Origin: Octopus sinensis
Taxonomy: Eukaryota
Reading direction: 5' to 3'
Assembly: GCF_006345805.1 (NCBI RefSeq)
Contig: NC_043026.1
Span: 12,999,579-13,063,578, forward strand
DNA: 64,000 nucleotides
Translations under genes and position numbers: made by a program
The notes under the pieces: model-generated
Seen by the model: the letters and a program-made list of their open reading frames with translations, nothing else
Databases searched by the model: none
What the model was told of the DNA's origin: nothing
Shown here: positions 15,290 through 57,905 of the stretch, piece after piece
Layout: each line of letters starts with the position of its first letter
How positions within the stretch are numbered: the first letter of the stretch is position 1

Positions 15290-15322
15290 GGGAAATCATT
15301 TGGTTCTACACAAAACTGTAAC

Positions 15323-22140: not shown

Positions 22141-22464
22141 CAAGTGTGAAAATGTGGAAGTTAAAATACTGAAGAACGTCTCTCATGATTCATGAAATTG
22201 TGTCTCAGCCAAAGAATTAACAGTGAACAGATCATCCTCTTGATGATATTTGTGGATTAGAAGAGAAGAATGATTTCTAACATGTTTCACCATTTCACGT
22301 TGGCATTAGGAAGGGCATCCAGCGAGAGAAACCAGGGCCAAAACAGACAACTGGTGCAGCTCTCCAGTCAAACCGTCCAACCCATGCCAGCATGGAAAAT
22401 GTGATGTTAAATATTGATGACTATTCCCTGTCATAAAATGTTCTCCAAAGAAAAGGGTTAATCA

Positions 22465-24247
22465 TATCTTACAGTTGAAAGGTTTCCCTCCAGAATGAAT
22501 CTTTTTCTCATTAATTCACTACAAGACACAATAAATTTCTTACATCTTTCACAATGGAATTCTATTTCCTCCTGTGTGACAACATTTGTGGTCAATTAGA
22601 CTACCACTCTGAGTAAAAGATTTTCCACATCTTTCACAGTGGAATTCTATTTCCTCCTGTGTGACAACATTTGTGGTCAATTAGACTACCACTCTGAGTA
22701 AAAGATTTTCCACATCTTTCACAGTGGAATTCTATTTCCTCCTGTGTGACAACATTTGTGGTCAATTAGACTACCACTCTGAGTAAAAGATTTTCCACAT
22801 CTTTCACAGTGGAATTCTATTTCCTCCTGTGTGACGACATTTGTGGTCAATTAGACTACCACTCTGAGTAAAAGATTTCCCACATATTTCACAGTGGAAG
22901 GGTCTTTCTCCAGTGTGGACCCTTTTGTGTGCTTTCAGGGTGCTACTACAAGCAAAACAATTCCCACATAATTCACATTGGAATCGTTTCTCCCCAGTGT
23001 GAATTCGTCTATGAACTCCAACTTGAAACTTATGAAGAAATTCTTTCCCATATATTCACAATTATTCTCTTTTATTCCAGAGTGTATTTTCTTATGGCGT
23101 GCACAAGAAGATTGATCAGAGAAGGATTTACCACACGTTTCACACTGGAAGGGTTTTTCCCCTGTATGGACCCTTTTATGTCTGTCTAAATCACTATTAG
23201 AGACAAAACATTTCCCACAGATTTCACAAGGAAAACGTTTTTCCCCAGTGTGTACAATTTTGTGTGTTCTTAATGTACTCCTAGAACCAAATGATTCTCC
23301 ACAGATTTCACAGTGGAACGGTTTTTCCCCAGTGTGTGTTTTTATGTGTGTTATTAAAACTCTATTTGTGACAAAAGATTTCTTACACAATTTACACTGG
23401 AATGGTTTCTCTCCTGTGTGACTACGTTTGTGAACCACAACATAAACATTCTTATTAAAAGACTTTCCACATATTTCACAATGGAAAGGCTTCTCCCCTG
23501 TGTGTATTGTTAAGACACTGCTAGAAACGAAAGATTTTCCACATATTTCACATCGGAATGGTTTCTCTCCAGTGTGACCACGTTTGTGAATTACAACAGA
23601 GGCAGAAGTAGCAAAAGATTTCCCACAGATTTCACATTGGTATGGTTTCTCTCCTGTGTGACGACGTTTGTGTCCAATGAGAGTAGAACTCTGAGCAAAA
23701 GATTTTCCACAAATTTCACAGTGGAAAGGTTTTTCCCCAGTGTGACTACGTTTGTGAATTACAACAGAGGCAGAAGTAGCAAAAGATTTTCCACAAATTT
23801 CACAGTGGAAAGGTTTTTCCCCAGTGTGACTACGTTTGTGAATTACAACAGAGGCAGAAGTAGCAAAAGATTTTCCACAAATTTCACAGTGGAAAGGTTT
23901 TTCCCCAGTTTGTGAGCTCCGAGATCATAATTTCTGTGAAATGATTTCCCACATATCTCACATTGTAAGGGTTTTTCTCCTGTATGTATTCGAATGTGTC
24001 CCTTTAAATCGCCATTAGAGATAAAACATTTCCCACAGATTTCACAACGGAACAGTTTTTCCTTCCTGTGTATTTCTTCATGTGAGAAGACTTCATCTTC
24101 TGAAGAGAATTTCTTCCTACAAATCTCACAGTGATATTCAGCAACACTTTTGTCTTCAGCTTCCTCATCTCTGTCTGTCTCTTCAACTGCATCTCCGTTC
24201 TCAAAAACAGTCGTCTTACAAGTGTCCAAGAGATTAACGTTCTCCAT
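22465..24247 (-). pseudogene. C2H2-ZNF pseudogene (MENVNLLDT leader; frameshifts at ~23910 and ~23055; 4 terminal 85-bp repeats)
   Basis: ORF pieces 23843-24247 and 22935-23438; inverted homolog of 15.5-17.1 kb. Confidence 0.9.
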
Positions 24248-24307
24248 ATGAATTCTTGGGGAATTCTTAAAAAGTAGACAAATGCTCGGTTTCTTATCGT
24301 TGATATC

Positions 24308-24395
24308 AAAGGCGGCGAGCTGGCAGAAAGGTTAGCACGCCGGGCGAAATGCTTAGTGGTATTTCGTCTGCCGCTACGTTCTGAGTTCAAATTTC
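24308..24395 (+). mobile_element. tRNA-derived SINE family 3, head only, replacing the proximal 5' module of the 24247 gene
   Basis: ggcggcgagctggcagaa...ctgagttcaaatt matches the head at 60570. Confidence 0.7.
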
Positions 24396-25009
24396 AATTT
24401 AAAAAGAAATAATCACAATTCGATGATTTCGATTCGAAAGACGAGCAATAGGCGGTGTCGTTGATAAGCTTTCCCCTAGTGTAAACGATACCGGTGACAT
24501 ATATTAAAAATCCCCAACATAATATAACACACGCCCAATTACATTAATTTACGTTATTGATTGTATCCAGCATCACACAACACAATTTCATGTAGACAGG
24601 AGTGAGCTTCGACGTGGTCTTTCGACCTTGTAGAAATAACAGCTAAGTCTCAAATAGATTACATCATTCTGACTTAACAAAACAAAGGAGACATTCTACA
24701 GTGCGGTCTTCGACAAATAATTGTTGTTGACACACTACGGCAGAAATTGTATTCACCTTAATAGACGTCATTGATTGGTTGATATTGCTGAAATGCAAGA
24801 GATTAAACAACAAATAGCTTACAAACTACAGAATTTTCTCAAAAGAGCCGAGAGAAAAAAATGTTTTAGGTAACACACTTCCAGTATACGAAGTTTTAAA
24901 GTATTTAGTTACAAAAAAATTATTTTAAAAATCTGCCGGTCAAAATGAAAAGATCCGTTATTTCTATATTTTATGCAAACAAAATGCACAAGAAAGCTAC
25001 ACGTTTGCA

Positions 25010-25192
25010 TTATGTTATATATACAATAATAATAAAGGATGTTACCGTATACATTTCTACAAACCAAGGACGTTATATGGATCTCCTTGACTCAAGTCAG
25101 AGAAGGGGTGCGTATTATACACAAGGTTTAGGTTTTTCAGAGGTACAGACCCCTAAAAATCCCCCGGGCGGACTATACTCGAGGATTTACGG
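25010..25192. mobile_element. Hybrid half of a Tc2/pogo-like MITE (left border of the integrated block)
   Basis: Ends ...tatactcgaggatttacgg|TA; homologous to the reverse complement of 52211-52360. Confidence 0.8.
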
Positions 25193-25765
25193 TACATTGC
25201 TATAATATCCGAAGCGTACTCATTTCCAGTTGAAAACTATATTCTAACCAAACGTTTTTTTGAGTGGGGATTTTTATTTTCGTCACCGCTTATATTCAAA
25301 CAAGGGAAAAAGTATCATCGACACCGTCTATTTTCTAATTTTCTTAATTAAATCTTTAAATCATTCGTTTTTTCGGATGAACGTTACCGGGCTACGAACA
25401 AGTCTGGTTTTTAGGGGTTCGTTCGACCCAACTCGACAAAACCAAAGCAAACATTCCACTGTCCCAGATTAATTATTTCATTTGATCAAAGCTTTAAATC
25501 GTTAATTGGTTTTTCCCTATTTTACAGAAAAGGAGGAAATGGCTTTTAATCAACAACAAATCAATCAACGAACTTTCTTCAGCCTTCTCCACTCTTCATT
25601 TGGACTTTATACCAAACATTCTACTGGTGAGTAGGAAATATATCTACATTGCATCTGTTCCACACTTGTAAACGGAGGACTGTGATATCTGAGACAAGAA
25701 ATTGAACCACAATAAATTAACTCACAGACGTTTGTCAGCTTTTTAAGAATTGCTCAAGAAATAAT

Positions 25766-28700
25766 ATGGAGACCGTTGATCACTTGGACACAATTGTTTT
25801 GAACGATACAGATACAGATAGAGAGACAGACGGGGATGAGAAAACTGTTAATGGTGAAGTATTTACTAAAGAAAGATCGAGACAGGGAAATATCACCGAA
25901 TATAAATGTGATGTTTGTAGGAAGACATTCTCTTCGGAGCAAGAAGTCTTTAAACACAAAGAAACACACAATAAGGAAAAAGCCTATAATTGTGAAATAT
26001 GTGGGAAATATTTTGTCTCTGAAGATGTCTTAACAAAACACAAACGGATACACACTGGAGCAAGACTGTTTCATTGTGAGATCTGTGGAAAATCGTTTCA
26101 ATGCAATTCTCATCTTGCAATACACACTCGTAGTCACACTGGGGAGAAACCATTCAAGTGTGAAATATGTGCAAAATCATTTGTCTGTAAAAGTGTACTA
26201 AAAATTCACAAAAGAATCCACTCTGGAGGAAAATTATTTCATTGTGAAATTTGTCAGAAATATTTTCTATTTAACAGTGATTTAAACAGACATAAACGAA
26301 TCCATAGTGGTGAGAAACCGTTTAGTTGTGAGATCTGCGGGAAATCATTTCTTAACAATTCTCATCTTGCAACACACACACGTCGTCACACTGGGGAGAA
26401 ACCATTCAAGTGTGAGATATGTGCAAAATCATTTATCTGTAAAAGTGAGCTAACATTTCACAAAAGACTCCACACTGGAGAAAAATTACTCCATTGTGAA
26501 ATATGTCCGAAATATTTTCGTTTTAACTGTGATTTAAACAGACATTTAAGAACACATTCAAGTGAAAAACCATTCCACTGTGAAACGTGTGGGAAAAGCT
26601 TTACTGATAACAGTGGCTTAACGAAACACAAAGGAATCCACACTGGAGCAAGACTGTTTCATTGTGAGATCTGTGGAAAATCGTTTCAATGCAATTCTCA
26701 TCTTGCAATACACACTCGTAGTCACACTGGGGAAAAACCATTCAAGTGTGAAATATGTGCGAAATCATTTGTCTGTAAAAGTGTACTACACAAACATAAA
26801 AGGATCCACTCTGATGAGAAACCCTTCAGTTGTGAGATCTGCGGGAAATCATATATTAACAATTCTGATCTTATTCTACACACTCGTAATCACACTGGGG
26901 AGAAACCATTCAAGTGTGAAATATGTGCAAAATCATTTGTCTGTAAAAGTGAACTAAACAAACATAAAAGGATCCACTCTGATGAGAAACCCTTCAGTTG
27001 TGAGATCTGTGGAAAATCGTTTCTTTGCAATTCTCATCTTGCAATACACACTCGTAGTCACACTGGGGAGAAACCATTCAAGTGTGAAATATGTGCAAAA
27101 TCATTTGTCTGTAAAAGTGAACTAAACAAACATAAAAGGATCCACTCTAATGAGAAACCCTTCAGTTGTGAGATCTGTGGAAAATCGTTTCTTTGCAATT
27201 CTCATCTTGCAATACACGCTCGTAGTCACACTGGGGAGAAACCATTCAAGTGTGAAATATGTGCAAAATCATTTGTCTGTAAAAGTGAATTAAACAAACA
27301 TAAAAGGATCCACTCTGATGGGAAACCCTTCAGTTGTGAGATCTGCGGGAAATCATTTCTTAGAAATTCTGAACTTTCAGTACACACACGTCGTCACACT
27401 GGGGAGAAACCATTCAAGTGTGAAATATGTGCAAAATCATTTGTCTGTAAAAGTGAACTAATCAAACATAAAAAGATCCGCTCTGATGAGAAACCGTTTA
27501 GTTGTGAGATCTGCGGGAAATCATATATTAACAATACTGATCTTGTCCTACACACACGTCGTCACACTGGGGAAAAACCATTCAAGTGTGAAATATGTGC
27601 AAAATCATTTGTCTGTAAAAGTGTACTAACAGCTCACAAAAGGATCCACTCTGATGAGAAACCCTTCAGTTGTGAGATCTGCGGGAAATCATTTCTTAGA
27701 AATTCTGATCTTGTTCGACACACACGTAGTCACACTGGGGAAAAACCATTCAAGTGTGAAATATGTGCAAAATCATTTGTCCGTAACAGTGTTTTAAACA
27801 GCCATAAAAGAATCCACTCTGATGAGAAACCCTTCAGTTGTGAGATCTGAGGGAAATCATTTCTTAGAAATTCTGATCTTGTTCTACACACACGTCGTCA
27901 CACTGGGGAGAAACCATTCAAGTGTGAAATATGTGCAAAATCATTTGTCTGTAAAAGTGAACTAAACAAACATAAAAGGATCCACTCTGATGAGAAACCC
28001 TTCAGTTGTGAGATCTGCGGGAAATCATTTCTTAGAAATTCTGATCTTGTTCTACACACTCGTAGTCACACTGGGGAAAAACCATTCAAGTGTGAAATAT
28101 GTCAGAAATCATTTGTTTGTAAAAGTGTACTAACAGCTCACAAAAGAATCCACTCTGATGAGAAACCCTTCAGTTGTGAGATATGCTTCAAATCATTTCT
28201 TAACAATTCTGATCTTGTTCTACACACACGTTGTCACACTGGGGAGAAACCATACAACTGTGAGATATGTGCAAAATCATTTATCTCAAAATGTCGACTA
28301 AAAATTCACAAAAGACTCCACACTGGAGCAAGACTGTTTCATTGTGAGATCTGTGGAAAATATTTTCTCTCCAATTATGCTTTAAACAGGCATAAACAAA
28401 CACATACAGGGGAGAAGCCTCACCATTGTGAGGTGTGTGGAAAAAGTTTCACTCAAGCCTCTCATCTTGCAGTTCACAAACGGATCCACACAGGAGAAAG
28501 ACCTTTCCACTGCAGGGTTTGTGGCAAATCTTATAATACAAATTTTACTCTTGTTCTTCACTTACGTAGTCACACAGGTGAAAGACCTTTCCATTGTGAA
28601 ATCTGTGGTAAATCCTTCTCTAATAATTCTTCTCTTGTAGTTCACAAACGAACTCACACTGGAGATAAACCTTTCCATTGTGGAATATGTGGAAAGTCTT

Positions 28701-29782
28701 TTGTCAGGAGCAGCCACTTAAACACACACAAATTTATTCACTCTAGAGGAAAAAGGTTTCACTGTGAAATGTGCGGGAAATGGTTCACTCTTAATTCTAC
28801 GCTTGTCATTCATAAACGAATTCACACTGGAGATAAACCTTTCCATTGTGGAATATGTGGAAAGTCTTTTGTCAGGAGCAGCCACTTAAACACACACAAA
28901 TTTATTCACTCTAGAGGAAAAAGGTTTCACTGTGAAATGTGCGGGAAATGGTTCACTCTTAATTCTACGCTTGTCATTCATAAACGAATTCACACCGGAG
29001 AAAAGCCTTATTGTTGTGATATATGTGGCTCATTGTTTGTCTCTCGCAGTAACTTAACGAAGCACGAACGAGTCCATACAGGAGACAAACCATTTGGCTG
29101 TGAAATATGTGGAAAATCTTTTGTTTGTAGCAGTGACTTAACGAGGCATAGAAGGGTCCATACTGGGGAAAAACCTTTCCACTGTGAAATATGTGGAAAA
29201 TCTTTTTCTCAGAATCCTCATCTTGTAATTCACAAACGTGGCCACACTGGAGAAAAGCCGTTCCACTGTGAAATGTGTGGGACATCATTTGTGTCTAGCA
29301 CTACCTTAACACAACACAAAAGGATACACTCAAAAGAGAAAGCATTTGGCTGTGAAATATGTGGGGAATCTTTTGTTTGTAGCAGTAAATTAACGAGGCA
29401 TAAAAGACTGCATTCTGAACAGAAACGCTTCCACTGTGAAATGTGTGGAAAATCTTTTACTCTGAATTCTCGTCTTGTAATTCACAAACGTCATCACACT
29501 GGAGAGAAGCCGTTCCACTGTGAATTCTGTGGGACATCGTTTGTGTCTGAGAGTGGCTTAACAAAACACAAAAGGATACATAAAGTTGAAGGACGTTTTT
29601 TTTGTGAAATCTGTGGGAAATGTTTTGCATCTAACAGTAACTTAACAGAACACAAAAGGGTCCATGCAGGGGAACAACGTTTTCCTTGTGAAATCTGTGG
29701 GAAATGTTTTGCATATAACAGTAACTTAACAGAACATAAAAGGATTCACTCTGGAGGGAAACCTTTTAACAGTGGAATATGA
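25766..29782 (+). CDS. Chimeric C2H2-ZNF frame: 46-aa leader + 46 finger repeats (1,338 codons) with a single in-frame TGA at 27848-27850; the upstream ORF alone gives 694 aa / 23 fingers
   Basis: Both ORF pieces (25766-27850 and 28433-29782) are in the same frame. Manual translation of 27851-28432 shows no stop. Confidence 0.88.
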
Positions 29783-32632
29783 TAAATCCTTAAAAACTTA
29801 CCAGGAATGGGACCAAAACATAAGAAAACGAGATCGGTTTGAGACGAAATCGTTAGTAAACGAATGAAGGACAAAATAATGAGCAGAATAAAGGTTTAGG
29901 GCCCCAGGAAAACAAGGATTAAATGAAAATAGTCGATAGAGAGCAAGAAAAGCCTTTGGGCTGCTGGACAAGACAAGAATGGGGAATGCGAAAGAGAAAT
30001 GAAAACTGTTGTAAAGGACAATGAACACTGGGTCGGTAGAGCAAGGAGCTCAAAAAATTGTGACCAGTGCGGACGAGGGCAACGCGTAAAAAGAATGACC
30101 ACTGCCTCAGGCAATCACCAATCACATTCTCAAGCAGTAATGTAATTTAGATAGAGATCGTTATGGCCAGTGTCATAGGCCACCGGCTGTTAGTGTCTGA
30201 AGGGGTGGTGTAGTGCTGTGTATTTTCTGGATGCAGAACCCTGGGTAACCCCATAGAACAGCCATAACTATCTTCATCTAATATATATGTATGTGTGTAA
30301 ATAGGTTTCTTTGTGTCTGCATCTGGCAAGTTATCTAACGCCTTTCCTCAGTCTGGTATAATAATATAGATCAGACTGGAGCCTGGTGCAGCCTCCTGGC
30401 TTCCCAGACCCTGGTCGAACTGTCCAACCCATGCTAGCATGGAAAACGGACATTAAATGATGATGATATGTATGTGTGTGTGTATAATTTCAGTAAATCA
30501 TGAATAGAAAAGAGAAGTATACTCTAAGTCATAGAGTAATTAGACAAAGGTAGTTATGGGCAGTGTATGGTTTTACACAGGGATTTGAGTGCATGAAGGG
30601 CTTAGCTTTACAGCATCTCTTCAGAAATTTATGGTTGGTCACCAGGGGCATAAGCTGTTACGATCTGACAACTGCTCTAAAACTAAGCCCAGAGGCCAGC
30701 CACAACTATCTTTATCTAATATACATGTTTCTTTCTGTTTGCATCTTACAAGTTCTTTTCTCCGTCTGCTATAATAATATAGAACACTTGTCCAAGACAT
30801 CTCATAGTGGGACTGAAACCGATATCAACATGGTATGGTTTAGAAAAGTGTCTAAATTCTGTAATGGTGGTCATGTTGGAATATGAAACCAACAGCTGGA
30901 GAGAGATTCATCCAAGTGAAACCTTTTCACTTTACCTCGTCTATCACTAATTTTTAATTAAAACCACAGGAAATTCAAAATCATTTTAAATAAAAATTTA
31001 TTCTTTATATTCCTTAGACTAGCATAAAACCACAAATTATTCAATGATGAAATCAGAAACAAGCAAAGAACATTCAATGTAAAAAGCAGACTTTCCTTTT
31101 CTTTGTGTCAATCAGATCCAGCAAAAACAGAGATCACTGAGAAATTTAGGCAAAACTTTATCATTGAAATTTGTGAGGAAATATTTTTTTGTCAATTTAA
31201 AATATTTTGTTAAAAATGTTCTGAATTTTGAAATTAAAATCCTTTCATTTTAATAATTTGTTGCATTATATTTTCTGGTCAGTTGATGTGATTCTTTCCA
31301 TTTTGATTCTTGAGTGAAAAACTTTCTTTTATTAAACAACATAAAACCACGTTTGCACTGCCAACTCCCTTATAATCAGGGGCTGTATTGTTCCCCTTCC
31401 AATCGAGGCTGCAGGTTTCTGCTTTCCAATCTTCATTTCTACTCCCTGATCTTTTATTCTTTGTTGCAGTCATTTTCCTGACAGGTATGAGGAAACAATG
31501 TCTGTAGGGGCAGGTGGAGGTGTACATTTGTACAGGTAAGCCTATATCAGTGGGGGAAGTTATTAAAGTACATACTATTAACAATAAAAATTTGCACAAT
31601 GACTTCTGAGTGCAACCTATGGCAACGGTTCACCTGCCCTCAGCATCTCTCTCTCCCTCCAACTCCGTTTCTGGCTTAAGTTTCCGTCTGCCGGCCTGAG
31701 CGATGTGGAACACATTGCATTTTATGAAATGGAAGTCAAGATTTGAATGGACTTACAAATACGAAAGACAAAAAGAACAACGAAGCAGAGATGCTTTTAT
31801 AGAAAGCGAGTGGAATATCTGTTGGATGTCTTGCAAACTACTTGCACATGCAAGAGCTACCAGTTAAAAGCTCCGTATACCGGAAGCTAGCAAGTGTATG
31901 GGGTCATCAGGAGAGAATGCGCGCCGTTTCGGGGCCTACCTCTCGACGGCTCCCCCTCACTGATATGAGGCCCCGCTTGCTAGATCAGCTGGTTATGAAG
32001 TTAAACTCAACATCCTTCTAGCCATCGCTCATCGTCTCTTTTTAACCAAATCCAGTGGCTAGCCTTCTCCATTTCGGGGCCTACTTCTCGACGGCATCAA
32101 TGCGCACTGCCCCCCACCTCACTGATATGAGGCCCCGCTTGCTAGATCAGCTGGTTATGAAGTTAAGCTCAATATCCTTCTAGCCATCACTCATCGTCTC
32201 TTTTTAACCAAATCCAGTGGCTAGCCTTCTCCACCGTAGATTAGAAAAGCATTTATGAGAGACAAACGCGAAAAATAAAGAAAACGATTCCAGCTCGTGT
32301 GGAATGATTTGAACGTATAAAACTTGTAAACAGAAACAAATTGGACAGCTTCAAAAGCTAGAATCACTTACAGAAAAAGAAGTTTATATATATGTAAATA
32401 TATAAACAAAGTTACGTAGCATATTGTAGAAGGGGTGAAGAAATGTTACTGGCTTTAGGAAAAGAAAGTACAAGTGGATCAGTTATTTAGGATTTTATTC
32501 AACGTCCCCTTCTCACATTCATTCAGTGCAGCCAATCTTCAGTTTTTCTAGGTCATCTAAAAGAACTCGGAAGGTGGGGCCTGAAACCAGGCCTTCCGCC
32601 ACCCACTTAAAGTCGGGAGCTGCCCTCATATA
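29783..32632. repeat. Segmental duplicate (inverted) of 52639-55484
   Basis: Collinear reverse-complement match at both ends and throughout, including the shared ~145-160-bp tandem duplication at 31927-32233. Confidence 0.95.
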
Positions 32633-33150
32633 CCGTAAATCCTCGAGTATAATCCGCATTTTTCCCCCAAAATTTAAAGGTCAGAATCCCTAGTGCGTAC
32701 TATATACGAGGTTCAAAAATGACAATTATTTTCTAAGCAATGACCAAGTCTCTATTTGCTGTCCGGCAATGTTTATTCAGACGCATTTTGTGATGTCGGG
32801 CGCTAAAATACCTTCAGCTAAGCCTGAAAGCAATGAAGTCATAAAAGAATCATCCATAACTTGCAATAAGCAACATTTATTAAACGTTATTACTGTTATT
32901 TCTTTATTTTATGTTATATATACAATAATAATAAAGGATGTTATATAGATCTCCTTGACTCAAGTTAGAGAAGGGGTGCGTATTATACACCAGGTTTAGG
33001 TTTTTCAGAGGTACAGCCCCCTAAAAATCCTCTGCGTATTATACCCAAGGGCGTGAAAATACCTTAAGCTAAGCCTGAAAGCAATGAAGTCATAAAAGAA
33101 TCATCCATAACTTGCAATAAGCAACATTTATTGAACGTTATTATTGTTAT
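32633..33150. mobile_element. Hybrid Tc2/pogo-like MITE (right border of the integrated block) plus a partial internal repeat
   Basis: TA|ccgtaaatcctcgagtataatccgc TIR; the distal TIR is absent and the sequence diverges from the 52211 copy after 32990. Confidence 0.8.
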
Positions 33151-33604
33151 TGGATCTTTTTGCTGAACGGCAGACTTTTAAAATAATTTCTTTGTAATTA
33201 AACACTTTTAAACTTCGTATACTGGTATAAATGTGTTTACATAACTTCTTTTACACTTGGCTTTCTTGAGAAAATTCTGTAGTTTGTAAGCTATTTGTTG
33301 TTTAATTTCTTGCATTTCAGCAATTTCAACCAATCAATGACGTCTATTGAGGTGAATACAATATCTCCGGATCTTTGTCAACAACAATTACTTGCTGTGT
33401 CTTCTTCTATGTTTAGCAGTTGGAAGAAGGCAGTCTGGGTCAAATGCTTCTTTTGGCTGTCTCCACATGTATACTAGGCCAGTGGGGTCGATCTAATTTA
33501 CTGGCTCCCTCCCCCCAAATTTCAGGCCTTGTGCCTAGAGTAGAATAGAATATTCATAACTTCTGATGATTTGCTGTGCATTGCAATATTTAAAAGAGAT
33601 TTAA

Positions 33605-49603: not shown

Positions 49604-51601
49604 TCATATTCCACAGTTAAGAGATTTCCTTCCTCTGTGAATCCTTTTGTGTTGTGTTAAGTTACTGCTAGTGGCAAAAGATTTTCCACAGATTTCACAG
49701 CGGAAAGGTTTTTCCCCTGTATGGATTCTTCTATGCTTCGTTAAGCTACTGCTATAATTAAAAGATTTCCCACATATCTGACAGCCAAATGGTTTCTCCC
49801 CTATATGTCTTCTTTGGTGTTTCGTTAAGATACTGTTAGACACAAACGATGTCCCGCAGATTTCACAGTGGAAAAGTTTTTCTCTTGTGTGGACACGTTT
49901 GTGAATTACAAGATGATAACTCTGAAAAAAAGATTTTCCACATACTTCGCAGAGGAAAGGCTTTTCTCCAGTATGGCCACGTTTGTGACATATGAGATGG
50001 GAATTCTGAGAAAAAGATTTTCCGCATATTTCACAGTGGAAAGGTTTCTCCCCAGTATGCAGTCGTTCATGCCTCGTTAAGTCACTGCCACAAACGAAAG
50101 TTTTCCCACAGATTTGACAGCGAAATGGTTTCACTCCTGAATGGATTCGTTTGTGTTTTGTTAAGTTGCCATTGTAGGCAAACAATGTGCCGCATATTTC
50201 ACAACGATACGGTTTTTCCCCAGTGTGACTCTGCTGATGTCTGACAAGAGTAGAATTTTGAGTGAAACACTTCCTGCATATTTCACAGCGAAGCAGTTTT
50301 CGTCCAGAGTCATTCAATTTGCACGTATTTAAGAGGCTGTTACCAACGAAGGGTTCCCCAAATATTTCATGGAAAGGCTTCTCTTCAGCGTGACTTCGTT
50401 TGTGAACAACAAGAAGAGAATTATCGGAGAAAGATTTCTCACACACTTCACAACGGTAGGGATTTTCTCCAGTGTCACTACGTTGGTGTTCAACGAGGCA
50501 TGGTTTATCAGCAAATGATTTTCCACCTATTTCAAAGCGATAAATATTTTCTCCAGTGTGACTAAGTTTGTGACGAACCAAATTAAAATTAACAGAGAAT
50601 GATTTACCACAGATATCACAATGATGTGGTTTCTCCCCGGTATGTGTTCGCTTATGTTTCTTTAAAGCACTATTACAGAAAAAATAATTTCCACATATCT
50701 CACAATCATAGGATTTTTCCCCCGTGTGGATCCGTTTGTGTTTCGTTAAGCCACTGTTATCAGTAAAGCTTTTCCCACACGTTTCACAGTGGAATGGTTT
50801 TTCACGTGAATGTGTTCTTAAATGCCTGTTTAAATCACAGTTAAAACGAAAATATTTCGGACATATTTCACAATGGAGTAATTTTTCTCCAGTGTGGAGT
50901 CTTTTGTGAAATGTTAGCTCACTTTTACAGATAAATGATTTTGCACAGATTTCACACTTGAATGGTTTCTCCCCAGTGTGACGACGTGTGTGTAGAACAA
51001 GATCAGAATTGTTAAGAAATGATCTCCCGCAGATCTCACAACTAAACGGTTTCTCACCACTATGGATTCGTTTATGTCTGTTTAAATCACTGTTAGATAA
51101 AAAATATTTCTGACAAATTTCACAATGAAATAATTTTCCTCCAGAGTGGATTCTTTCGTGAATTTTTAGTACACTTTTACAGACAAATGATTTTGCACAA
51201 ATTTCACACTTGAATGGTTTCTCCCCAGTGTGACTACGAGTGTGTAGAACAAGATCAGAATTGTTAATGAATGATTTCCCGCAGATCTCACAATGAAACA
51301 GTCTTGCTCCAGTGTGTATCCGTTTGTGTTTCGTTAAGACATCTTCAGAGACAAAATATTTCCCACATATTTCACAATTATAGGCTTTTTCCTTATTGTG
51401 TATTTCTTTGTGTTTAAAGACTTCTTGCTCCGAAGGGAATGTCTTCCTACAAACATCACATTTATATTCGGTGATATTTCCCTGTCTCGATCTTTCTTTA
51501 GTAAATACTTCACCATTAACAGTTTTCTCATCCCCGTCTGTCTCTCTATCTGTATCTGTATCGTTCAAAACAATTGTGTCCAAGTGATCAACGGTCTCCA
51601 T
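49604..51601 (-). CDS. C2H2 zinc-finger protein 'B', 665 aa: 46-aa leader + 22 repeats (repeats 12 and 14 degenerate)
   Basis: Intact ORF with the conserved 5' module. Confidence 0.93.
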   Translation of the reverse strand: METVDHLDTIVLNDTDTDRETDGDEKTVNGEVFTKERSRQGNITEYKCDVCRKTFPSEQEVFKHKEIHNKEKAYNCEICGKYFVSEDVLTKHKRIHTGARLFHCEICGKSFINNSDLVLHTRSHTGEKPFKCEICAKSFVCKSVLKIHERIHSGGKLFHCEICQKYFLSNSDLNRHKRIHSGEKPFSCEICGRSFLNNSDLVLHTRRHTGEKPFKCEICAKSFICKSELTFHKRLHTGEKLLHCEICPKYFRFNCDLNRHLRTHSREKPFHCETCGKSFTDNSGLTKHKRIHTGEKSYDCEICGNYFFCNSALKKHKRTHTGEKPHHCDICGKSFSVNFNLVRHKLSHTGENIYRFEIGGKSFADKPCLVEHQRSDTGENPYRCEVCEKSFSDNSLLVVHKRSHAEEKPFHEIFGEPFVGNSLLNTCKLNDSGRKLLRCEICRKCFTQNSTLVRHQQSHTGEKPYRCEICGTLFAYNGNLTKHKRIHSGVKPFRCQICGKTFVCGSDLTRHERLHTGEKPFHCEICGKSFSQNSHLICHKRGHTGEKPFLCEVCGKSFFQSYHLVIHKRVHTREKLFHCEICGTSFVSNSILTKHQRRHIGEKPFGCQICGKSFNYSSSLTKHRRIHTGEKPFRCEICGKSFATSSNLTQHKRIHRGRKSLNCGI

Positions 51602-52210
51602 ATTATTTCTTGAGCAATTCTTAAAAAGCTGACAAACGTCTGTGAGTTAATTTATTGTGGTTCAATTTCTTGTCTTAGATATCACAGTCCTCCGTTTACA
51701 AGTGTGGAACAGATGCAATGTAGATATATTTCCTACTCACCAGTAGAATGTTTGGTATAAAGTCCAAATGAAGAGTGGAGAAGGCTGAAGAAAGTTCGTT
51801 GATTGATTTGTTGTTGATTAAAAGCCATTTCCTCCTTTTCTGTAAAATAGGGAAAAACCAATTAACGATTTAAAGCTTTGATCAAATGAAATAATTAATC
51901 TGGGACAGTGGAATGTTTGCTTTGGTTTTGTCGAGTTGGGTCGAACGAACCCCTAAAAACCAGACTTGTTCGTAGCCCTGTCTTATCCGCAAACGGTAAC
52001 GTTCACCTCAACATGAGATAATTACTACGAATGATTTAATTAGATTTAATTAAGAAAATTAGAAACACGGTAGACGGTGTCGATGATACTTTTTCCCTTG
52101 TTTGAATATAAGCGGTGACGAAAATAAAAATCCCCACTCAAAAATAAACGTTTGGTTAGAATATAGTTTTCAACTGGAAATGAGTACGCTTCGGATATTA
52201 TAGCAATGTA

Positions 52211-52638
52211 CCGTAAATCCTCGAGTATAGTCCGCCCAGGGGATTTTTAGGGGTCTGTACCTCTGAAAAACCTAAACCTTGTGTATAATACGCACCCCTT
52301 CTCTAACTTGAGTCAAGGAGATCTATATAACATCCTTTATTATTATTGTATATATAACATAAAATAAAGAAATAACAGTAATAACGTTTAATAAATGTTG
52401 CTTATTGCAAGTTATGGATGATTCTTTTATGACTTCATTGCTTTCAGGCTTAGCTGAAGGTATTTTCGCGCCCGACATCACAAAATGCGTCTGAATAAAC
52501 ATTGCCGGACAGCAAATAAGGACTCGGACATTGCTTAGAAAATAATTGTCATTTTTGAACCTCGTATATAGTACGCACTAGGGATTTTGACCTTTAAATT
52601 TTGGGGGAAAAAAGCAGATTATACTCGAGGATTTACGG
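52211..52638. mobile_element. Complete Tc2/pogo-like MITE (428 bp)
   Basis: TIRs ccgtaaatcctcgagtata(g/a)tc(c/t)gc; TA at 52209-10 and 52639-40. Confidence 0.85.
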
Positions 52639-55484
52639 TATATGAGGGCAGCTCCCGACTTTAAGTGGGTGGCGGAAGGCCTGGTTTCAGGCCCCACCTT
52701 CCGAGTTCTTTTAGATGACCTAGAAAAACTGAAGATCGGCTGCACTGAATGAATGTGAGAAGGGAACATTGAATAAAATCCTAAATAACTGATCCACTTG
52801 TACTTTCTTTTCCTAAAGCCAGTAACATTTCTTCACCCCTTCTACAATACGCTACGTAACTTTGTTTATATATTTACATATATATAAACTTCTTTTTCTG
52901 TAAGTGATTCTAGCTTTTGAAGCTGTCCAATTTGTTTCTGTTTACAAGTTTTATACGTTCAAATCATTCCACACGAGCTGGAATCGTTTTCTTTATTTTT
53001 CGCGTTTGTCTCTCATAAATGCTTTTCTAATCTACAGTGGAGAAGGCTAGCCACTGGATTTGGTTAAAAAGAGACGATGAGCGATGGCTAGAAGGATATT
53101 GAGCTTAACTTCATAACCAGCTGATCTAGCAAGCGGGGCTTCATATCAGTGAGGGGGGGGGCAGTGCGCATTGATGCCGTCGAGAGGTAGGCCCCGAAAT
53201 GGAGAAGGCTAGCCACTGGATTTGGTTAAAAAGAGACGATGAGCGATGGCTAGAAGGATGTTGAGTTTAACTTCATAACCAGCTGATCTAGCAAGCGGGG
53301 CCTCATATCAGTGAGGGGGGCCGTCGAGAGGTAGGCCCCGAAATGGCTCGCATTCTCTCCTGATGACCCCATACACTTGCTAGCTTCCGGTATACGGAGC
53401 TTTTAACTGGTAGCTTTTGCCTGTGCAAGTAGTTTGCAAGACATCCAACAGATATTCCACAGCATCTCTGCTTCGTTGTTCTTTTTGTCTTTCGTATTTG
53501 AAAGTTCATTCTAATCTTGACTTCCATTTCATAAAATGCAATGTGTTCCCCATCGCTCAGGCCGGCAGACGGAAACTTAAGCCAGAAACGGAGTTGGAGG
53601 GAGTGAGAGTGAGAGATGCCCAGGGCAGGTGAACCGTTGCCATAGGTTGCACTCAGAAGCCGTTGTGCAAATTTTTATTGTTGATAGTATGTACTTTAAT
53701 AACTTCCCCCACTGATATAGGCTTACCTGTACAAATGTACACCTTCACCTGCCCCTACAGACATTGTTTCCTCATACCTGTCAGGAAAATGACTGCAACA
53801 AAGAATAAAAGATCAGGGAGTAGAAATGAAGATTGGAAAGCAGAAACCTGCAGCCTCGATTGGAAGGGGAACAATACAGCCCCTGATTATAAGGGAGTTG
53901 GCAGTGCAAACGTGGTTTTATGTTGTTTAATAAAAGAACGTTTTTCACTCAAGAATCAAAATGGAAAGAATCACATCAACTGACCAGAAAATATAATGCA
54001 ACAAATTATTAAAATGAAAGGATTTTAATTTCAAAATTCAGAACATTTTTAACAAAATATTTTAAATTGACAAAAAAATATTTCCTCACAAATTTCAATG
54101 ATAAAGTTTTGCCTAAATTTCTCAGTGATTTCTGTTTTTGCTGGATCTGATTGACACAAAGAAAAGGAAAGTCTGCTTTTTACATTGAATGTTCTTTGCT
54201 TGTTTCTGATTTCATCATTGAATAATTTGTGGTTTTATGCTAGTCTAAGGAATATAAAGAATAAATTTTTATTTAAAATGATTTTGAATTTCCTGTGGTT
54301 TTAATTAAAAATTAGTGATAGACGAGGTAAAGTGAAAAGGTTTCACTTGGACGAATCTCTCTCCAGCTGTTGGTTTCATATTCCAACATGACCACCATTA
54401 CAGAATTTAGACACTTTTCTAAACCATACCGTGTTGATATCGGTTTCAGTCCGACTATGAGATGTCTTGGACAAGTGTTCTATATTATTATAGCAGACGG
54501 AGAAAAGAACTTGTGAGATGCAAACAGAAAGAAACATGTATATTAGATAAAGATAGTTGTGGCTGGTCTATGGGCTTAGTTTTAGAGCAGTTGTCAGATC
54601 GTAACAGCTTATGCCCCTGGTGACCAACCAGAAATTTCTGAAGAGATGCTGTAAAGCTAAGCCCTTCATGCACTCAAATCCCTGTGTAAAACCATACACT
54701 GCCCATAACTACCTTTGTCTAATTACTCTATTGCTCTATGACTTGGAGTATACTTCTCTTTTCTATTCATGATTTACAGAAATTATACACACACACATAA
54801 ATATCATCATCATTTAATGTCCGTTTTCCATGCTAGCATGGGTTGGACAGTTCGACCAGGGTCTGGGAAGCCAGGAGGCTGCACCAGGCTCCAGTCTGAT
54901 CTATATTATTATACCAGACTGAGGAAAGGCGTTAGATAACTTGCCAGATGCAGACACAAAGAAACCTATTTACACACATACATATATATTAGATGAAGAT
55001 AGTTATGGCTGTTCTATGGGGTTACCCAGGGTTCTGCATCCAGAAAATACACAGCATTACACCACCCCTTCAGACACTAACAGCCGGTGGCCTATCACAC
55101 TGGCCATAACGATCTCTATCTAATTACATTACTGCTTGAGAATGTGATTGGTGATTGCCTGAGGCAGTGGTCATTCTTTTTACGCGTTGCCCTCGTCCGC
55201 ACTGGTCACAATTTTTTGAGCTCCTTGCTCTACCGACCCAGTGTTCATTGTCCTTTACAAGTTTTCATTTCTCTTTCGCATTCCCCATTCTTGTCTTGTC
55301 CAGCAGCCCAAAGGCTTTTCTTGCTCTCTATCGACTATTTTCATTTAATCCTTGTTTTCCTGGGGCCCTAAACCTTTATTCTGCTCATTATTTTGTCCTT
55401 CATTCATTTACTAACGATTTCGTCTCAAACCGATCTCGTTTTCTTATGTTTTGGTCCCATTCCTGGCAAGTTTTTAAGGATTTA

Positions 55485-57905
55485 TCATATTCCACTGTTA
55501 AAAGGTTTCCCTCCAGAGTGAATCCTTTTGTGTTCTGTTAAGTTACTGTTATATGCAAAACATTTCCCACAGATTTCACAAGGAAAACGTTGTTCCCCTG
55601 CATGGACCCTTTTGTGTTCTGTTAAGTTACTGTTAGATGCAAAACATTTCCCACAGATTTCACAAAAAAAACGTCCTTCAACTTTATGTATCCTTTTGTG
55701 TTTTGTTAAGCCACTCTCAGACACAAACGATGTCCCACAGAATTCACAGTGGAATGGCTTCTCTCCAGTGTGATGACGTTTGTGAATTACAAGACGAGAA
55801 TTCAGAGTAAAAGATTTTCCACACATTTCACAGTGGAAGCGTTTCTGTTCAGAATGCAGTCTTTTATGCCTCGTTAATTTACTGCTACAAACAAAAGATT
55901 CCCCACATATTTCACAGCCAAATGCTTTCTCTTTTGAGTGTATCCTTTTGTGTTGTGTTAAGGTAGTGCTAGACACAAATGATGTCCCACACATTTCACA
56001 GTGGAACGGCTTTTCTCCAGTGTGGCCACGTTTGTGAATTACAAGATGAGGATTCTGAGAAAAAGATTTTCCACATATTTCACAGTGGAAAGGTTTTTCC
56101 CCAGTATGGACCCTTCTATGCCTCGTTAAGTCACTGCTACAAACAAAAGATTTTCCACATATTTCACAGCCAAATGGTTTGTCTCCTGTATGGACTCGTT
56201 CGTGCTTCGTTAAGTTACTGCGAGAGACAAATAATGAGCCACATATATCACAACAATAAGGCTTTTCTCCGGTGTGAATTCGTTTATGAATGACAAGCGT
56301 AGAATTAAGAGTGAACCATTTCCCGCACATATCACAGTGAAACCTTTTTCCTCTAGAGTGAATAAATTTGTGTGTGTTTAAGTGGCTGCTCCTGACAAAA
56401 GACTTTCCACATATTCCACAATGGAAAGGTTTATCTCCAGTGTGAGTTCGTTTGTGAACTACAAGAGAAGAATTATTAGAGAAGGATTTACCACAGATTT
56501 CACAATGGAAAGGTCTTTCACCTGTGTGACTACGTAAGTGAAGAACAAGAGTAAAATTTGTATTATAAGATTTGCCACAAACCCTGCAGTGGAAAGGTCT
56601 TTCTCCTGTGTGGATCCGTTTGTGAACTGCAAGATGAGAGGCTTGAGTGAAACTTTTTCCACACACCTCGCAATGGTGAGGCTTCTCCCCTGTATGTGTT
56701 TGTTTATGCCTGTTTAAAGCATAATTGGAGAGAAAATATTTTCCACAGATCTCACAATGAAACAGTCTTGCTCCAGTGTGGAGTCTTTTGTGAATTTTTA
56801 GTCGACATTTTGAGATAAATGATTTTGCACATATCTCACAGTTGTATGGTTTCTCCCCAGTGTGACAACGTGTGTGTAGAACAAGATCAGAATTGTTAAG
56901 AAATGATTTGAAGCATATCTCACAACTGAAGGGTTTCTCATCAGAGTGGATTCTTTTGTGAATACTAAGTACACTTTTAGATACAAATGATTTCTGACAT
57001 ATTTCACACTTGAATGGTTTCTCCCCAGTGTGACTACGTGTGTGTAGAACAAGATCAGAATTGGTAATACAAGATTTCCCGCATATCTCACAACTGAAGG
57101 GTTTCTCATCAGAGTGGATTCTTTTGTGAATTCTAAGTACACTTTTAGATACAAATGATTTCTGACATATTTCACACTTGAATGGTTTCTCCCCAGTGTG
57201 ACTACGTGTGTGTAGAACAAGATCAGAATTGTTAATATATGATTTCCCGCAGATCTCACAACTGAAGGGTTTCTCATCAGAGTGGATCCTTTTATGTCTG
57301 TTTAAAACACTGTTACAGGCAAATGATTTTGCACATATTTCACACTTGAATGGTTTCTCCCCAGTGTGACGACGTGTGTGTACTGAAAGTTCAGAATTTC
57401 TAAGAAATGATTTCCCGCAGATCTCACAACTGAAGGGTTTCTCATCAGAGTGGATTCTTTTATGGTTGTTTAAAACACTGTTATGGACAAATGATTTCGC
57501 ACAAATTTCACACTTGAATGGTTTCTCCCCAGTGTGACTACGAGTGTGTATTGCAAGATGAGAATTGCATTGAAACGATTTTCCACAGATCTCACAATGG
57601 AACAGTCTTGCTCCAGTGTGTATCCGTTTGTGTTTCGTTAAGACATCTTCAGAGACAAAATATTTCCCACATATTTCACAATTATAGGCTTTTTCCTTAT
57701 TGTGTATTTCTTTGTGTTTAAAGACTTCTTGCTCCGAAGGGAATGTCTTCCTACAAACATCACATTTATATTCGGTGATATTTCCCTGTCTCGATCTTTC
57801 TTTAGTAAATACTTCACCATTAACAGTTTTCTCATCCCCGTCTGTCTCTCTATCTGTATCTGTATCGTTCAAAACAATTGTGTCCAAGTGATCAACGTTC
57901 TCCAT
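55485..57905 (-). CDS. C2H2 zinc-finger protein 'A', 806 aa: 46-aa leader + 27 fingers
   Basis: Intact ORF with the conserved 5' module (internal deletion). Confidence 0.93.
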   Translation of the reverse strand: MENVDHLDTIVLNDTDTDRETDGDEKTVNGEVFTKERSRQGNITEYKCDVCRKTFPSEQEVFKHKEIHNKEKAYNCEICGKYFVSEDVLTKHKRIHTGARLFHCEICGKSFQCNSHLAIHTRSHTGEKPFKCEICAKSFVHNSVLNNHKRIHSDEKPFSCEICGKSFLRNSELSVHTRRHTGEKPFKCEICAKSFACNSVLNRHKRIHSDEKPFSCEICGKSYINNSDLVLHTRSHTGEKPFKCEICQKSFVSKSVLRIHKRIHSDEKPFSCEICGKSCITNSDLVLHTRSHTGEKPFKCEICQKSFVSKSVLSIHKRIHSDEKPFSCEICFKSFLNNSDLVLHTRCHTGEKPYNCEICAKSFISKCRLKIHKRLHTGARLFHCEICGKYFLSNYALNRHKQTHTGEKPHHCEVCGKSFTQASHLAVHKRIHTGERPFHCRVCGKSYNTNFTLVLHLRSHTGERPFHCEICGKSFSNNSSLVVHKRTHTGDKPFHCGICGKSFVRSSHLNTHKFIHSRGKRFHCDMCGKWFTLNSTLVIHKRIHTGEKPYCCDICGSLFVSRSNLTKHERVHTGDKPFGCEICGKSFVCSSDLTRHRRVHTGEKPFHCEICGKSFSQNPHLVIHKRGHTGEKPFHCEMCGTSFVSSTTLTQHKRIHSKEKAFGCEICGESFVCSSKLTRHKRLHSEQKRFHCEMCGKSFTLNSRLVIHKRHHTGEKPFHCEFCGTSFVSESGLTKHKRIHKVEGRFFCEICGKCFASNSNLTEHKRVHAGEQRFPCEICGKCFAYNSNLTEHKRIHSGGKPFNSGI

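What the first reader, a model, noticed from the sequence alone, without database searches (positions are those of the whole stretch)
26600..26670. Base-level chimeric junction joining two ZNF genes in frame
Seen: upstream (gataacagtggcttaacgaaacacaaa..atccacac) matches B finger 9 (50724-50765). Downstream (tggagcaagactg...) matches A after finger 2 (57615 down). B-F9 and A-F2 share cttaacgaaacacaaacggat.cacac (LTKHKRIHTG), and the switch maps to ~26639-26643. Caveat: fingers 3 and 6 of the chimera have A-like helices (NSHLA), so later conversion occurred. Inference: linker and His-region homology lets arrays recombine in register, creating new composite DNA-binding specificities in one step.
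Basis: partly seen in the sequence, partly recalled or inferred. Interest (0 to 1): 0.7.

Follow-up and report, generated by a model that had tools for sequence, protein, structure and literature searches.

The report
Hybrid zinc-finger gene from two neighbours
One zinc-finger gene in this cluster is a clean in-frame hybrid of two neighbouring genes, joined inside a 27-base stretch they share, and its flanks suggest it was copied as one exact turn of the DNA between them, probably as a circle; this is a tidy example of a known way such gene families diversify, and the copy now carries a stop codon.

Summary
Gene C (+, ATG 25766) matches gene B (finger 9) up to 26638 and gene A (finger 2 linker, finger 3) from 26644. 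In the 168 nt on each side, informative sites split 78:2 and 1:62 (P=6e-37). The switch lies in CACAC inside a 27-nt tract present in A-F2, B-F2 and B-F9.

The flanks add to the case. The 8.19-kb C unit (24961-33151) is a circular permutation of the A-F3 to B-F9 interval. It consists of B's 5' flank and fingers 1-9, then A's 3' half and the whole A-B intergenic region. It ends 6 bp (GTTATT) past the point where it began. It lies exactly between 243-nt inverted arms. This is the signature of a circular intermediate, or of one period of a tandem duplication, closed at the in-frame join.

- Finger 24 has an in-frame TGA (27848-27850), yet the 22 fingers beyond it look constrained (4 synonymous : 1 non-synonymous differences from A), so the stop is probably young.
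- The A-like array grew from 7 to 17 fingers.
- A second in-register join sits at 28822-27.

Polarity (C as product rather than source), expression and DNA-binding are unproven. This is a new member of a known kind.

The parts
26617..26643 (+). 27-nt homology tract at the join (codes LTKHKGIHT). It has 2 C-specific mismatches to the parental tract.
   Evidence: (pattern search)
26639..26643 (+). Switch interval CACAC (finger nt 61-65: second His codon plus the first 2 nt of the Thr codon). B-type to the left, A-type to the right.
25766..27850 (+). Gene C, first open piece: ATG to in-frame TGA, 694 aa. Contains the N-terminus, fingers C1-C23 and a truncated C24.
   Evidence: C2H2 Pfam hits only, no KRAB
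27848..27850 (+). In-frame TGA replacing the second Cys codon (TGC in sister fingers) of finger C24.
27851..29782 (+). Same frame continued: rest of C24 to C46, then the stop. C28-C46 match A11-A27 at 0-1 mismatch per finger.
24961..26638 (+). B-derived part of the C unit. It matches source 52376 to 50729 on the minus strand: B 5' flank, exon-1-like and intron-like pieces, N-terminus and fingers 1-9.
26644..33050 (+). A-derived part of the C unit. It matches source 57615 to 52219: F2 linker, finger 3, array, A11-A27, A 3' flank and the whole A-B intergenic region.
   Evidence: (28757-33034 vs 56511-52237, 97.6% over 4293 nt)
33049..33151 (+). Second partial copy of source 52473-52371 (96%). 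It ends in GTTATT, the same 6 nt that start the unit at 24961. It aligns seamlessly across the closure when the unit is rotated.
24714..24960 (.). Left inverted arm X (contains CCAAT and TGACGTC). It abuts the unit at GATCC|GTTATT.
33152..33394 (.). Right inverted arm X' (86-90% complementary to X). It abuts the unit at GTTATT|GGATC.
49604..51601 (-). Gene B (665 aa, about 22 fingers). Fingers 1-9 are about 98-99% identical to C. Fingers 10-22 are only about 75-79% identical to A/C. The 27-mer is in B9 at 50724-50750.
55485..57905 (-). Gene A (806 aa, 27 intact fingers). The 27-mer is in A2 at 57616-57642.
51602..55484 (-). A-B intergenic region. All of it is represented in the flanks of C: the B-proximal part upstream of C and the A-proximal part downstream of C.
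26086..26120 (+). Finger 3 helix patch where C=A!=B at 13 sites. It reflects a conversion in C or in B; which one is unresolved.
26363..26373 (+). Finger 6 helix micro-patch (NSHLAT in C versus NSDLVL in B).
26747..28174 (+). Expanded two-finger (168-nt) array C11-C27, against A4-A10 in A. It is a mosaic of 35-122-nt exact matches to A. The AKSF fingers are mid-finger B4/A6-type hybrids.
28822..28827 (+). Second in-register switch (finger nt 60-65, CACACT). It created the 168-nt duplication C34-35 / C36-37.

Best explanation
Gene C is a recombinant C2H2 poly-zinc-finger gene. Its 5' flank, N-terminus and fingers 1-9 come from gene B. Its finger-2 linker, finger 3 and everything downstream come from gene A.

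The join formed by short-homology, in-register recombination within a 27-nt tract. This tract covers the end of the recognition helix and the two His codons, and it is shared by B finger 9 and A finger 2. No recognition helix was split and the frame was kept.

A lies upstream of B on the same strand. Recombination between these direct repeats therefore yields a B5'-A3' junction on the excised circle, or equivalently on the duplication product of an unequal exchange. The C unit is exactly one turn of that interval, reopened in the A-B intergenic region and set down about 19 kb away in inverted orientation between two inverted arms.

Shown: the junction, the mosaic parentage, the circular permutation and the inverted arms.

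Inferred: that a circle, rather than a tandem intermediate, carried the unit; that C is the product rather than the source; that C was expressed and selected.

After its birth the gene changed further:
- helix patches in fingers 3 and 6;
- growth of the two-finger array;
- a 168-nt duplication made by a second join at the same finger position;
- recently, a nonsense mutation in finger 24.

The encoded protein would be an A-type protein with B's seven fingers F3-F9 inserted after finger 2. This gives a composite set of DNA-contacting helices.

The confidence of 0.66 is for the full statement, including the circle route. C being the product of the B-F9/A-F2 join by either route (circle or tandem intermediate) is about 0.78.
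For: Junction: discrete switch at 26639-26643, informative sites 78:2 versus 1:62, P=6e-37.

Parentage:
- In 25228-26085, C is nearly identical to B while A carries 46 private substitutions and two large deletions.
- C28-C46 equal A11-A27 at 0-1 mismatch per finger, and the 3' flank is 98.4% identical to A's over 3.2 kb.
- B's fingers 10-22 are only about 75-79% identical to A/C.
- The 5' tree is therefore ((B,C),A) and the 3' tree is ((A,C),B).

One exact turn:
- The left end of the unit is source 52376 and the right end is source 52371, a 6-bp overlap.
- The rotated unit is colinear with the source, and one HSP runs seamlessly across the closure.
- The donor order 'ab' against recipient order 'ba' in the same direction is the published eccDNA signature (PMC7188851).

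Age: the divergences are compatible with a single event. C-B 5' is about 1% and the C-A 3' flank is 1.58%.

Polarity: all changes since the B/C split in the 5' block lie on C (9 substitutions and 5 deletions, against 0 on B). Two C-specific substitutions lie inside the 27-mer.

Not an assembly error: C differs from both parents by about 1-2% throughout and has private structure.

Generality: a second join maps to the same finger nt 60-65.
Against: - C is not between A and B, as a simple unequal crossover would leave it.
- The unit carries an extra 255-nt copy of source 52473-52219, which needs a further event.
- The GTTATT repeat at both unit ends, and the 31- and 39-nt extra pieces in C's left flank that are bounded by short direct repeats, read at least as naturally if C were the source.
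- Right of the join only about 110 nt are cleanly A-type. C10 equals C's own finger 3 as well as A3, and one site (26659) is B2/C2-type rather than A2-type.
- 5' coding divergence (13/716) exceeds 3' coding divergence (5/1440), P=8e-4.
- There is no transcript, no population data and no outgroup data. No close homologue was found in the protein databases.
Confidence: 0.66

Rival explanations
1. Reverse polarity. C is the older gene. A circle consisting of the whole segment between the X arms (closed at GTTATT by microhomology) integrated through the 27-mer into an ancestral single gene 'A5'-F2|B10-3''. This created both A and B as the hybrids and created the A-B intergenic region.
For: Excision and integration are mirror images, so the junction and the permutation fit equally well. 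GTTATT is present twice in C and once in the source, as expected for microhomology closure. The 31- and 39-nt pieces present only in C's left flank are bounded by short direct repeats, so they look like deletions in the source. Inverted arms at both ends could form a stem whose loop is excised.
Against: All post-split changes in the 5' block are on C and none are on B, whereas B would be the new copy under this model. The 174-nt internal repeat of C (26029-26202 versus 26617-26790) would need a separate recent event ending exactly at the crossover tract. The inter-region would have to lose one 255-nt copy. The order B9-B10-B11 is weakly mirrored in paralogues G2 (fingers 7-9) and G1 (fingers 6-8), which suggests that B's F9-F10 adjacency is native (weak).
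Confidence: 0.17
2. Same recombination, but no circle. An unequal exchange made a tandem A-C-B array (anti-Lepore type). About 8 kb around C was then duplicated or moved to 25-33 kb in inverted orientation, and the tandem array collapsed back to A-B.
For: The hybrid has the 5' end of the downstream gene and the 3' end of the upstream gene, with both parents retained, as in the duplication product of unequal crossing-over. PMC7188851 warns that tandem duplication followed by deletion can mimic the circle signature.
Against: A segment copied out of a tandem array has no reason to begin and end within 6 bp of the same source position in a 6.9-kb period. This route also needs three events, plus loss of the intermediate.
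Confidence: 0.12
3. C is an old paralogue at its present site that was overwritten by two independent gene-conversion tracts, one from B (5') and one from A (3'). The tracts happen to abut at 26639-26643.
For: Conversion and module exchange are frequent in this cluster. Examples are the finger 3 and 6 patches and the G1 5' module, which is 98% identical to C.
Against: It requires two tract ends to coincide within 5 nt out of register (B finger 9 opposite finger 2). It also requires the outer tract ends to coincide within 6 bp of the same source position. No older 'resident' sequence remains anywhere in the 8.19-kb unit.
Confidence: 0.03
4. Assembly artefact: reads from A and B were mis-joined in a repeat.
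For: ZNF arrays are hard to assemble. The join lies in a shared tract.
Against: The shared tract is only 27 nt. C differs from both parents by about 1-2% on both sides. It has private indels, 12 extra fingers and unique flanking context.
Confidence: 0.02

Closest known systems
Haemoglobin Lepore / anti-Lepore type hybrid genes (unequal crossing-over between tandem paralogues); cited from general knowledge
   Same: The parents are neighbours in direct orientation. The join is in homologous register and in frame. C has the 5' end of the downstream gene and the 3' end of the upstream gene, with both parents retained, which is the anti-Lepore configuration.
   Different: The homology is only 27 nt. 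The join is seven repeat units out of positional register (finger 9 against finger 2). The hybrid is not between its parents; it is about 19 kb away, inverted, as one exact turn of the interval.
eccDNA-mediated (circular-intermediate) duplication: Takahashi and Innan 2020 (PMC7188851); cattle colour-sidedness KIT translocation (Durkin et al. 2012, as cited there)
   Same: Donor order ab becomes recipient order ba in the same direction. The copy is inserted at an unrelated site.
   Different: Here the closure junction lies inside two coding sequences and makes an in-frame hybrid gene. Takahashi and Innan state that none of their human cases created new coding-gene copies. The circle itself has not been observed here.
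In-register unequal exchange within C2H2 finger arrays (PRDM9 coding minisatellite, KRAB-ZNF finger gain and loss): PMC3890296, PMC2779102 (titles and abstracts) and general knowledge
   Same: The 84-nt finger repeats recombine in register, and helix-coding patches are exchanged. The C11-C27 expansion and the C34-37 duplication are of this kind.
   Different: The main join is between two different genes, not within one array. These genes have no KRAB, SET or other Pfam effector domain.
Yeast HXT6/7 hybrid gene and its circle (recombination between adjacent paralogues); recalled from memory, not checked here
   Same: Recombination between adjacent direct paralogues gives a hybrid gene on a circle or on an amplified array.
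   Different: That case involves long, near-identical homology and somatic or experimental-evolution settings. This one is a fixed or segregating germline copy made at short homology.

Membership tests
C2H2 (Krueppel-type) poly-zinc-finger genes | Tandem C-x2-C-x12-H-x3-H units of 28 aa joined by TGEKP-like linkers | tested here: met
   C has 46 units, A has 27 and B about 22. Pfam zf-C2H2 / zf-H2C2_2 E-values range from 1e-76 to 1e-178.
KRAB-ZNF (tetrapod type) | N-terminal KRAB domain (PF01352) | tested here: not met
   No KRAB, SCAN, BTB or ZAD hit in A, B or C. The N-terminus is about 47 aa, acidic, and has no database relative.
Hybrid gene by unequal crossing-over (Lepore / anti-Lepore type) | Parents adjacent and in direct orientation | tested here: met
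   A is at 57905-55485 and B at 51601-49604, both on the minus strand and 3.9 kb apart.
Hybrid gene by unequal crossing-over (Lepore / anti-Lepore type) | Single discrete switch within shared homology, with the frame kept | tested here: met
   Switch at 26639-26643 inside the 27-mer; P=6e-37.
Hybrid gene by unequal crossing-over (Lepore / anti-Lepore type) | Hybrid lies between the two parents in the same orientation | tested here: not met
   C is at 25-33 kb on the opposite strand. G6 and repeats lie between it and B.
Circular-intermediate (eccDNA) duplication | Recipient is a circular permutation of the donor (ab to ba, same direction) | tested here: met
   the criterion is taken from PMC7188851.
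Circular-intermediate (eccDNA) duplication | Exactly one turn: the two ends map to the same donor point | tested here: met
   The ends map to source 52376 and 52371 (6-bp GTTATT overlap), and an HSP runs across the closure. Caveat: there is an extra 255-nt copy next to the opening point.
Circular-intermediate (eccDNA) duplication | No second copy of 'a' or 'b' flanking the recipient (excludes tandem duplication plus deletion in situ) | tested here: met
   The recipient is bounded by unrelated X arms, and the donor is single-copy and intact.
Circular-intermediate (eccDNA) duplication | The circle is physically detected | not testable with these tools
   Needs Circle-seq or long reads from germline tissue.
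Processed retrocopy | Loss of introns and flanks, poly(A) tail | tested here: not met
   The intron-like piece, 0.8 kb of 5' flank and 3.3 kb of 3' flank were all copied.
Functional (expressed, intact) gene | Uninterrupted reading frame | tested here: not met
   TGA at 27848-27850. However, the codons downstream look constrained.

The most novel reading that the evidence does not exclude
A germline DNA circle formed by 27-nt, in-register recombination between finger 9 of one zinc-finger gene and finger 2 of its upstream neighbour. This created a complete in-frame hybrid gene at its own closure junction. The circle reintegrated at the centre of an inverted repeat. The new gene was kept under purifying selection long enough to diverge by about 1.5% at silent sites before acquiring a recent nonsense mutation. 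If so, circles are a route by which large C2H2 clusters, possibly the cephalopod expansion, mint new finger combinations.
Probability: 0.4. Interest if true: 0.6.

Novelty: new member of a known kind. Interest (0 to 1): 0.45.

Why it matters
Large C2H2 zinc-finger families are thought to diversify by duplication, finger shuffling and conversion. Events are rarely caught with both parents, the product and all junctions legible at base level.

In this case one short-homology event moved a block of seven fingers, with its promoter, onto another gene's array without splitting a recognition helix. The flanks record how the copy travelled: one exact turn, the circle signature.

If the window is cephalopod, as the SINE-like repeats suggest from memory only, it speaks to a stated gap. 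[quoted passage not shown]

The locus also offers a natural experiment for how adding a finger block changes DNA binding, by comparing A, B and C.

Tried and rejected
- Protein database search with C piece 1, residues 1-330: only generic ZNF hits at no more than 51% identity. It gave neither an orthologue nor the organism.
- Search with the non-finger N-terminus of A: nothing.
- Exact-product look-ups for C piece 1 and for A: not on record, so there is no transcript or other-assembly evidence.
- Rfam and tRNA scans: nothing.
- Pfam scan of four non-ZNF ORFs: nothing, so no transposase was seen that could explain the move.
- Plain tandem duplication of fingers 3-9 inside C: rejected. Only C10 and half of C11 resemble C3-C4; C12 onward do not resemble C5-C9.
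- 'A is C minus fingers 3-9': rejected. A's 5' block is the outgroup to B and C, with 46 private substitutions and 52- and 61-nt deletions.
- 'B is the only hybrid' (C 5' copied into B): disfavoured. It needs a conversion end and a separate internal-repeat end to coincide in the same 5 nt.
- Using paralogues G1 and G2 as outgroups for finger order: only 1-5 mismatches better than background, so it is a weak result.
- A target-site duplication outside the X arms: only an imperfect GTCTTC match; not pursued.
- Literature searches for a described ZNF hybrid of this kind: no direct precedent found, but the library is partial.
- The octopus genome paper (PMC4795812) is not held.
Full report
WHAT THE WINDOW IS

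The 64-kb window is a eukaryotic cluster of C2H2 poly-zinc-finger genes (39% G+C). A motif scan finds 178 finger units in eight genes on both strands.

Three genes matter here:
- Gene C: plus strand, ATG 25766, 46 units of exactly 84 nt starting at 25907, frame ends at 29782.
- Gene B: minus strand, 51601-49604, 665 aa, about 22 units.
- Gene A: minus strand, 57905-55485, 806 aa, 27 intact units.

Pfam finds only C2H2-type domains and no KRAB, SCAN, BTB or ZAD. The 47-aa acidic N-terminus has no relative in the protein database. Whole-protein searches return only generic ZNF hits at no more than 51% identity. The organism is therefore not identified by any tool. SINE-like repeats at 35066-35603 resemble, from my memory only, the abundant octopus SINE. 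A cephalopod origin is a lead, not a result.

CHECK OF THE OBSERVATION

The comparison aligned C in register with B finger 9 and with A finger 2. The last site where C=B!=A is 26638. The first site where C=A!=B is 26644.

In the 168 nt to the left there are 78 B-type and 2 A-type sites. In the 168 nt to the right there are 1 and 62. Fisher P=5.9e-37, and there is no interleaving at the junction.

The shared tract CTTAACGAAACACAAACGGATMCACAC is present without mismatch in A2, B2 and B9. It has one mismatch in C2 and two at the junction, and never appears in shuffles. It spans the end of the recognition helix and both His codons. The join therefore leaves finger 9's helix wholly B-type and the linker wholly A-type, in frame. 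Outside this 27-nt island, B9/B10 and A2/A3 differ at about 30-40% of positions. The event used short homology, not a long identical tract.

PARENTAGE OF THE TWO HALVES

- From 25228 to 26085, C and B are nearly identical. A carries 46 private substitutions and 52- and 61-nt deletions.
- Fingers C1-2, C4-5 and C7-9 equal B's at 1-2 mismatches per 84 nt.
- C28-C46 equal A11-A27 at 0-1 mismatch each.
- C's 3' flank matches A's at 98.4% over 3.2 kb.
- B's fingers 10-22 are only about 75-79% identical to A/C.

C is therefore sister to B in the 5' part and sister to A in the 3' part.

THE FLANKS: ONE EXACT TURN

C's 5' flank is B's 5' flank. C's 3' flank runs through A's 3' flank and the entire A-B intergenic region (28757-33034 versus 56511-52237).

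At base level the unit starts at 24961, which is source 52376 (GTTATTTCT...). It ends at 33151, which is source 52371 (...GTTATT). The same six bases sit at both ends.

I rotated the unit at the junction and compared it with the source interval (A F2 linker to B F9). The two are colinear, and one HSP runs without a gap across the artificial closure.

The donor order ('A 3' part plus intergenic', then 'B 5' part') is swapped in the recipient while the direction is kept. This is the criterion used to call eccDNA-mediated duplications (PMC7188851). Recombination between the direct repeats A-F2 and B-F9 puts the B-F9|A-F3 join on the excised circle, or on the duplication product of an unequal exchange. 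That is what C carries.

The unit lies exactly between two inverted arms, 24714-24960 and 33152-33394 (86-90% complementary). Their inner ends would read AAAAGATCC|GGATCTTTT if joined.

One complication remains. A 255-nt piece (source 52473-52219) is present twice around the opening point, which needs one more event.

AGE AND CONSTRAINT

- C-B divergence in the 5' block is about 1%.
- The C-A 3' flank differs at 51 of 3234 sites, or 1.58%. These two figures are compatible with a single event.
- In C28-C46 versus A11-A27 there are 4 synonymous and 1 non-synonymous codon differences in 480 codons. The probability of at most 1 of 5 being non-synonymous under neutrality is 0.013. Coding divergence there is 0.35% against 1.58% in the flank, P=1e-4.
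- Yet finger C24 has TGA in place of its second Cys codon (27848-27850).

The 22 fingers beyond the stop have therefore been under purifying selection for most of the gene's life. The stop is young, segregating, or an error. As assembled, the product would be 694 aa with 23 fingers, and it would still contain the junction.

In the B-derived coding part the count is 6 synonymous to 6 non-synonymous.

LATER REMODELLING

- Finger 3: C3, A3 and C10 are identical in the helix region, while B3 is closest to A7. With A as outgroup, the change may be on B rather than a conversion in C. This is unresolved.
- Finger 6: there is an 11-nt patch in the helix.
- Array: the two-finger array is 17 fingers in C (C11-C27) against 7 in A (A4-A10). 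It is a mosaic of 35-122-nt exact matches to A. Its AKSF-type fingers are mid-finger hybrids, with nt 1-42 of B4/C4 type and nt 43-84 of A4/A6 type, amplified along the array.
- Second join: an independent in-register join (C35|C36) has its switch at finger nt 60-65 (28822-28827, CACACT). The main join is at nt 61-65. This second join made the 168-nt duplication C34-35/C36-37.

POLARITY AND RIVALS

Excision and integration are mirror images. A circle made from the C unit and integrated through the 27-mer into an ancestral 'A5'-F2|B10-3'' gene would give the same picture, with A and B as the hybrids.

Evidence for C as the product:
- Every change since the B/C split in the 5' block is on C (9 substitutions and 5 deletions against 0 on B).
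- Two C-specific substitutions sit inside the 27-mer.
- C's 174-nt internal repeat follows directly from the join.
- The B9-B10-B11 order is weakly echoed in G1 and G2.

Evidence for the reverse:
- The GTTATT repeat at both unit ends looks like microhomology closure.
- The 31- and 39-nt pieces present only in C's left flank are bounded by short direct repeats.

My estimates:
- C as the product of the B-F9/A-F2 join, by either route: about 0.78. That splits into about 0.66 via a circle (the best explanation) and about 0.12 via a tandem A-C-B intermediate followed by relocation. The tandem route is less likely because a copied segment has no reason to start and stop within 6 bp of the same donor point.
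- Reverse polarity: about 0.17.
- Two independent conversions abutting within 5 nt: about 0.03.
- Misassembly: about 0.02. C is 1-2% diverged from both parents and has private structure.

COMPARISON WITH KNOWN SYSTEMS

In configuration C is an anti-Lepore-type hybrid: 5' end of the downstream gene, 3' end of the upstream gene, both parents retained. It fails the positional criterion because it is not between its parents.

It meets the sequence criteria for a circular-intermediate duplication. Takahashi and Innan note that none of their human cases made new coding copies, so a hybrid gene at the closure junction is an uncommon variant.

In-register exchange within finger arrays is well known from PRDM9 and KRAB-ZNF genes (and general knowledge).

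No new principle is required. This is a new, unusually legible member of a known kind.

LIMITS

There are no transcript, population or outgroup data. DNA-binding consequences are untested. The exon-1-like and intron-like pieces (25540-25728) are read from the sequence only.

Noticed in passing
27848-27850: In-frame TGA replaces the second Cys codon of finger C24. The codons downstream still look constrained (4 synonymous: 1 non-synonymous versus A).
   Followed up: yes
28822-28827 (duplication 28679-28846 / 28847-29014): A second in-register join at the same finger position (nt 60-65, CACACT) made a two-finger duplication (C34-35 / C36-37) that is absent from A.
   Followed up: yes
26747-28174: The AKSF-type fingers of the C array are mid-finger hybrids (first half B4/C4 type, second half A4/A6 type) and were amplified. 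C13 equals C25 exactly, and C14 and C16 are nearly the same as C3 and C10.
   Followed up: partly
24714-24960 and 33152-33394; third copy 63733-63909: A 243-nt element X with CCAAT and TGACGTC motifs flanks the C unit as an exact inverted pair. It may be a promoter-like module upstream of G4, or the arms of a long-TIR element. No clear target-site duplication was seen.
   Followed up: partly
32798-33151 and 24961-25184: An extra 255-nt copy of source 52473-52219 lies around the opening point of the unit. The junction at 33031-33050 carries a divergent 17-20-nt patch.
   Followed up: partly
25256-25404: A cluster of five C-specific deletions (2, 4, 2, 12 and 16 nt) and several substitutions lies in C's 5' flank. 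B has none, so this may be decay of C's promoter region.
   Followed up: partly
3789-4129 (gene G1, minus strand): G1's 5' module (exon-1-like piece, intron-like piece and the first ~25 codons) is 98% identical to C 25498-25839 and is then unrelated. Exchange of the 5' module seems recurrent in the cluster (G6 90%, G2 88%).
   Followed up: partly
14135-16900 (+) and 21822-24331 (-): G3 and G4 are inverted duplicates (95.7% over 1.4 kb). Their finger arrays jump between frames, so they are probably pseudogenes.
   Followed up: no
50368-50536 (gene B fingers 12 and 14): Two B fingers have lost their Cys ligands (FEIGGKSF, HEIFGEPF), and there is a 3-nt shift of register after finger 13. B's old 3' half is decaying while its frame stays open.
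   Followed up: no
58060-58160 (gene A upstream): A lacks 52 and 61 nt that B, C and G1 keep. The 61-nt loss removes most of the exon-1-like ORF and changes its phase, so the upstream ATG is probably non-coding.
   Followed up: partly
35066-35603; about 400-nt copies near 40930, 43800, 45130, 48400, 59620: A SINE-like repeat family, here in three tandem units. It resembles the octopus SINE from memory only. ARAGORN and Rfam find nothing.
   Followed up: partly
33717-34846: A 391-nt tandem repeat, 2.9 copies, 95% matches.
   Followed up: no
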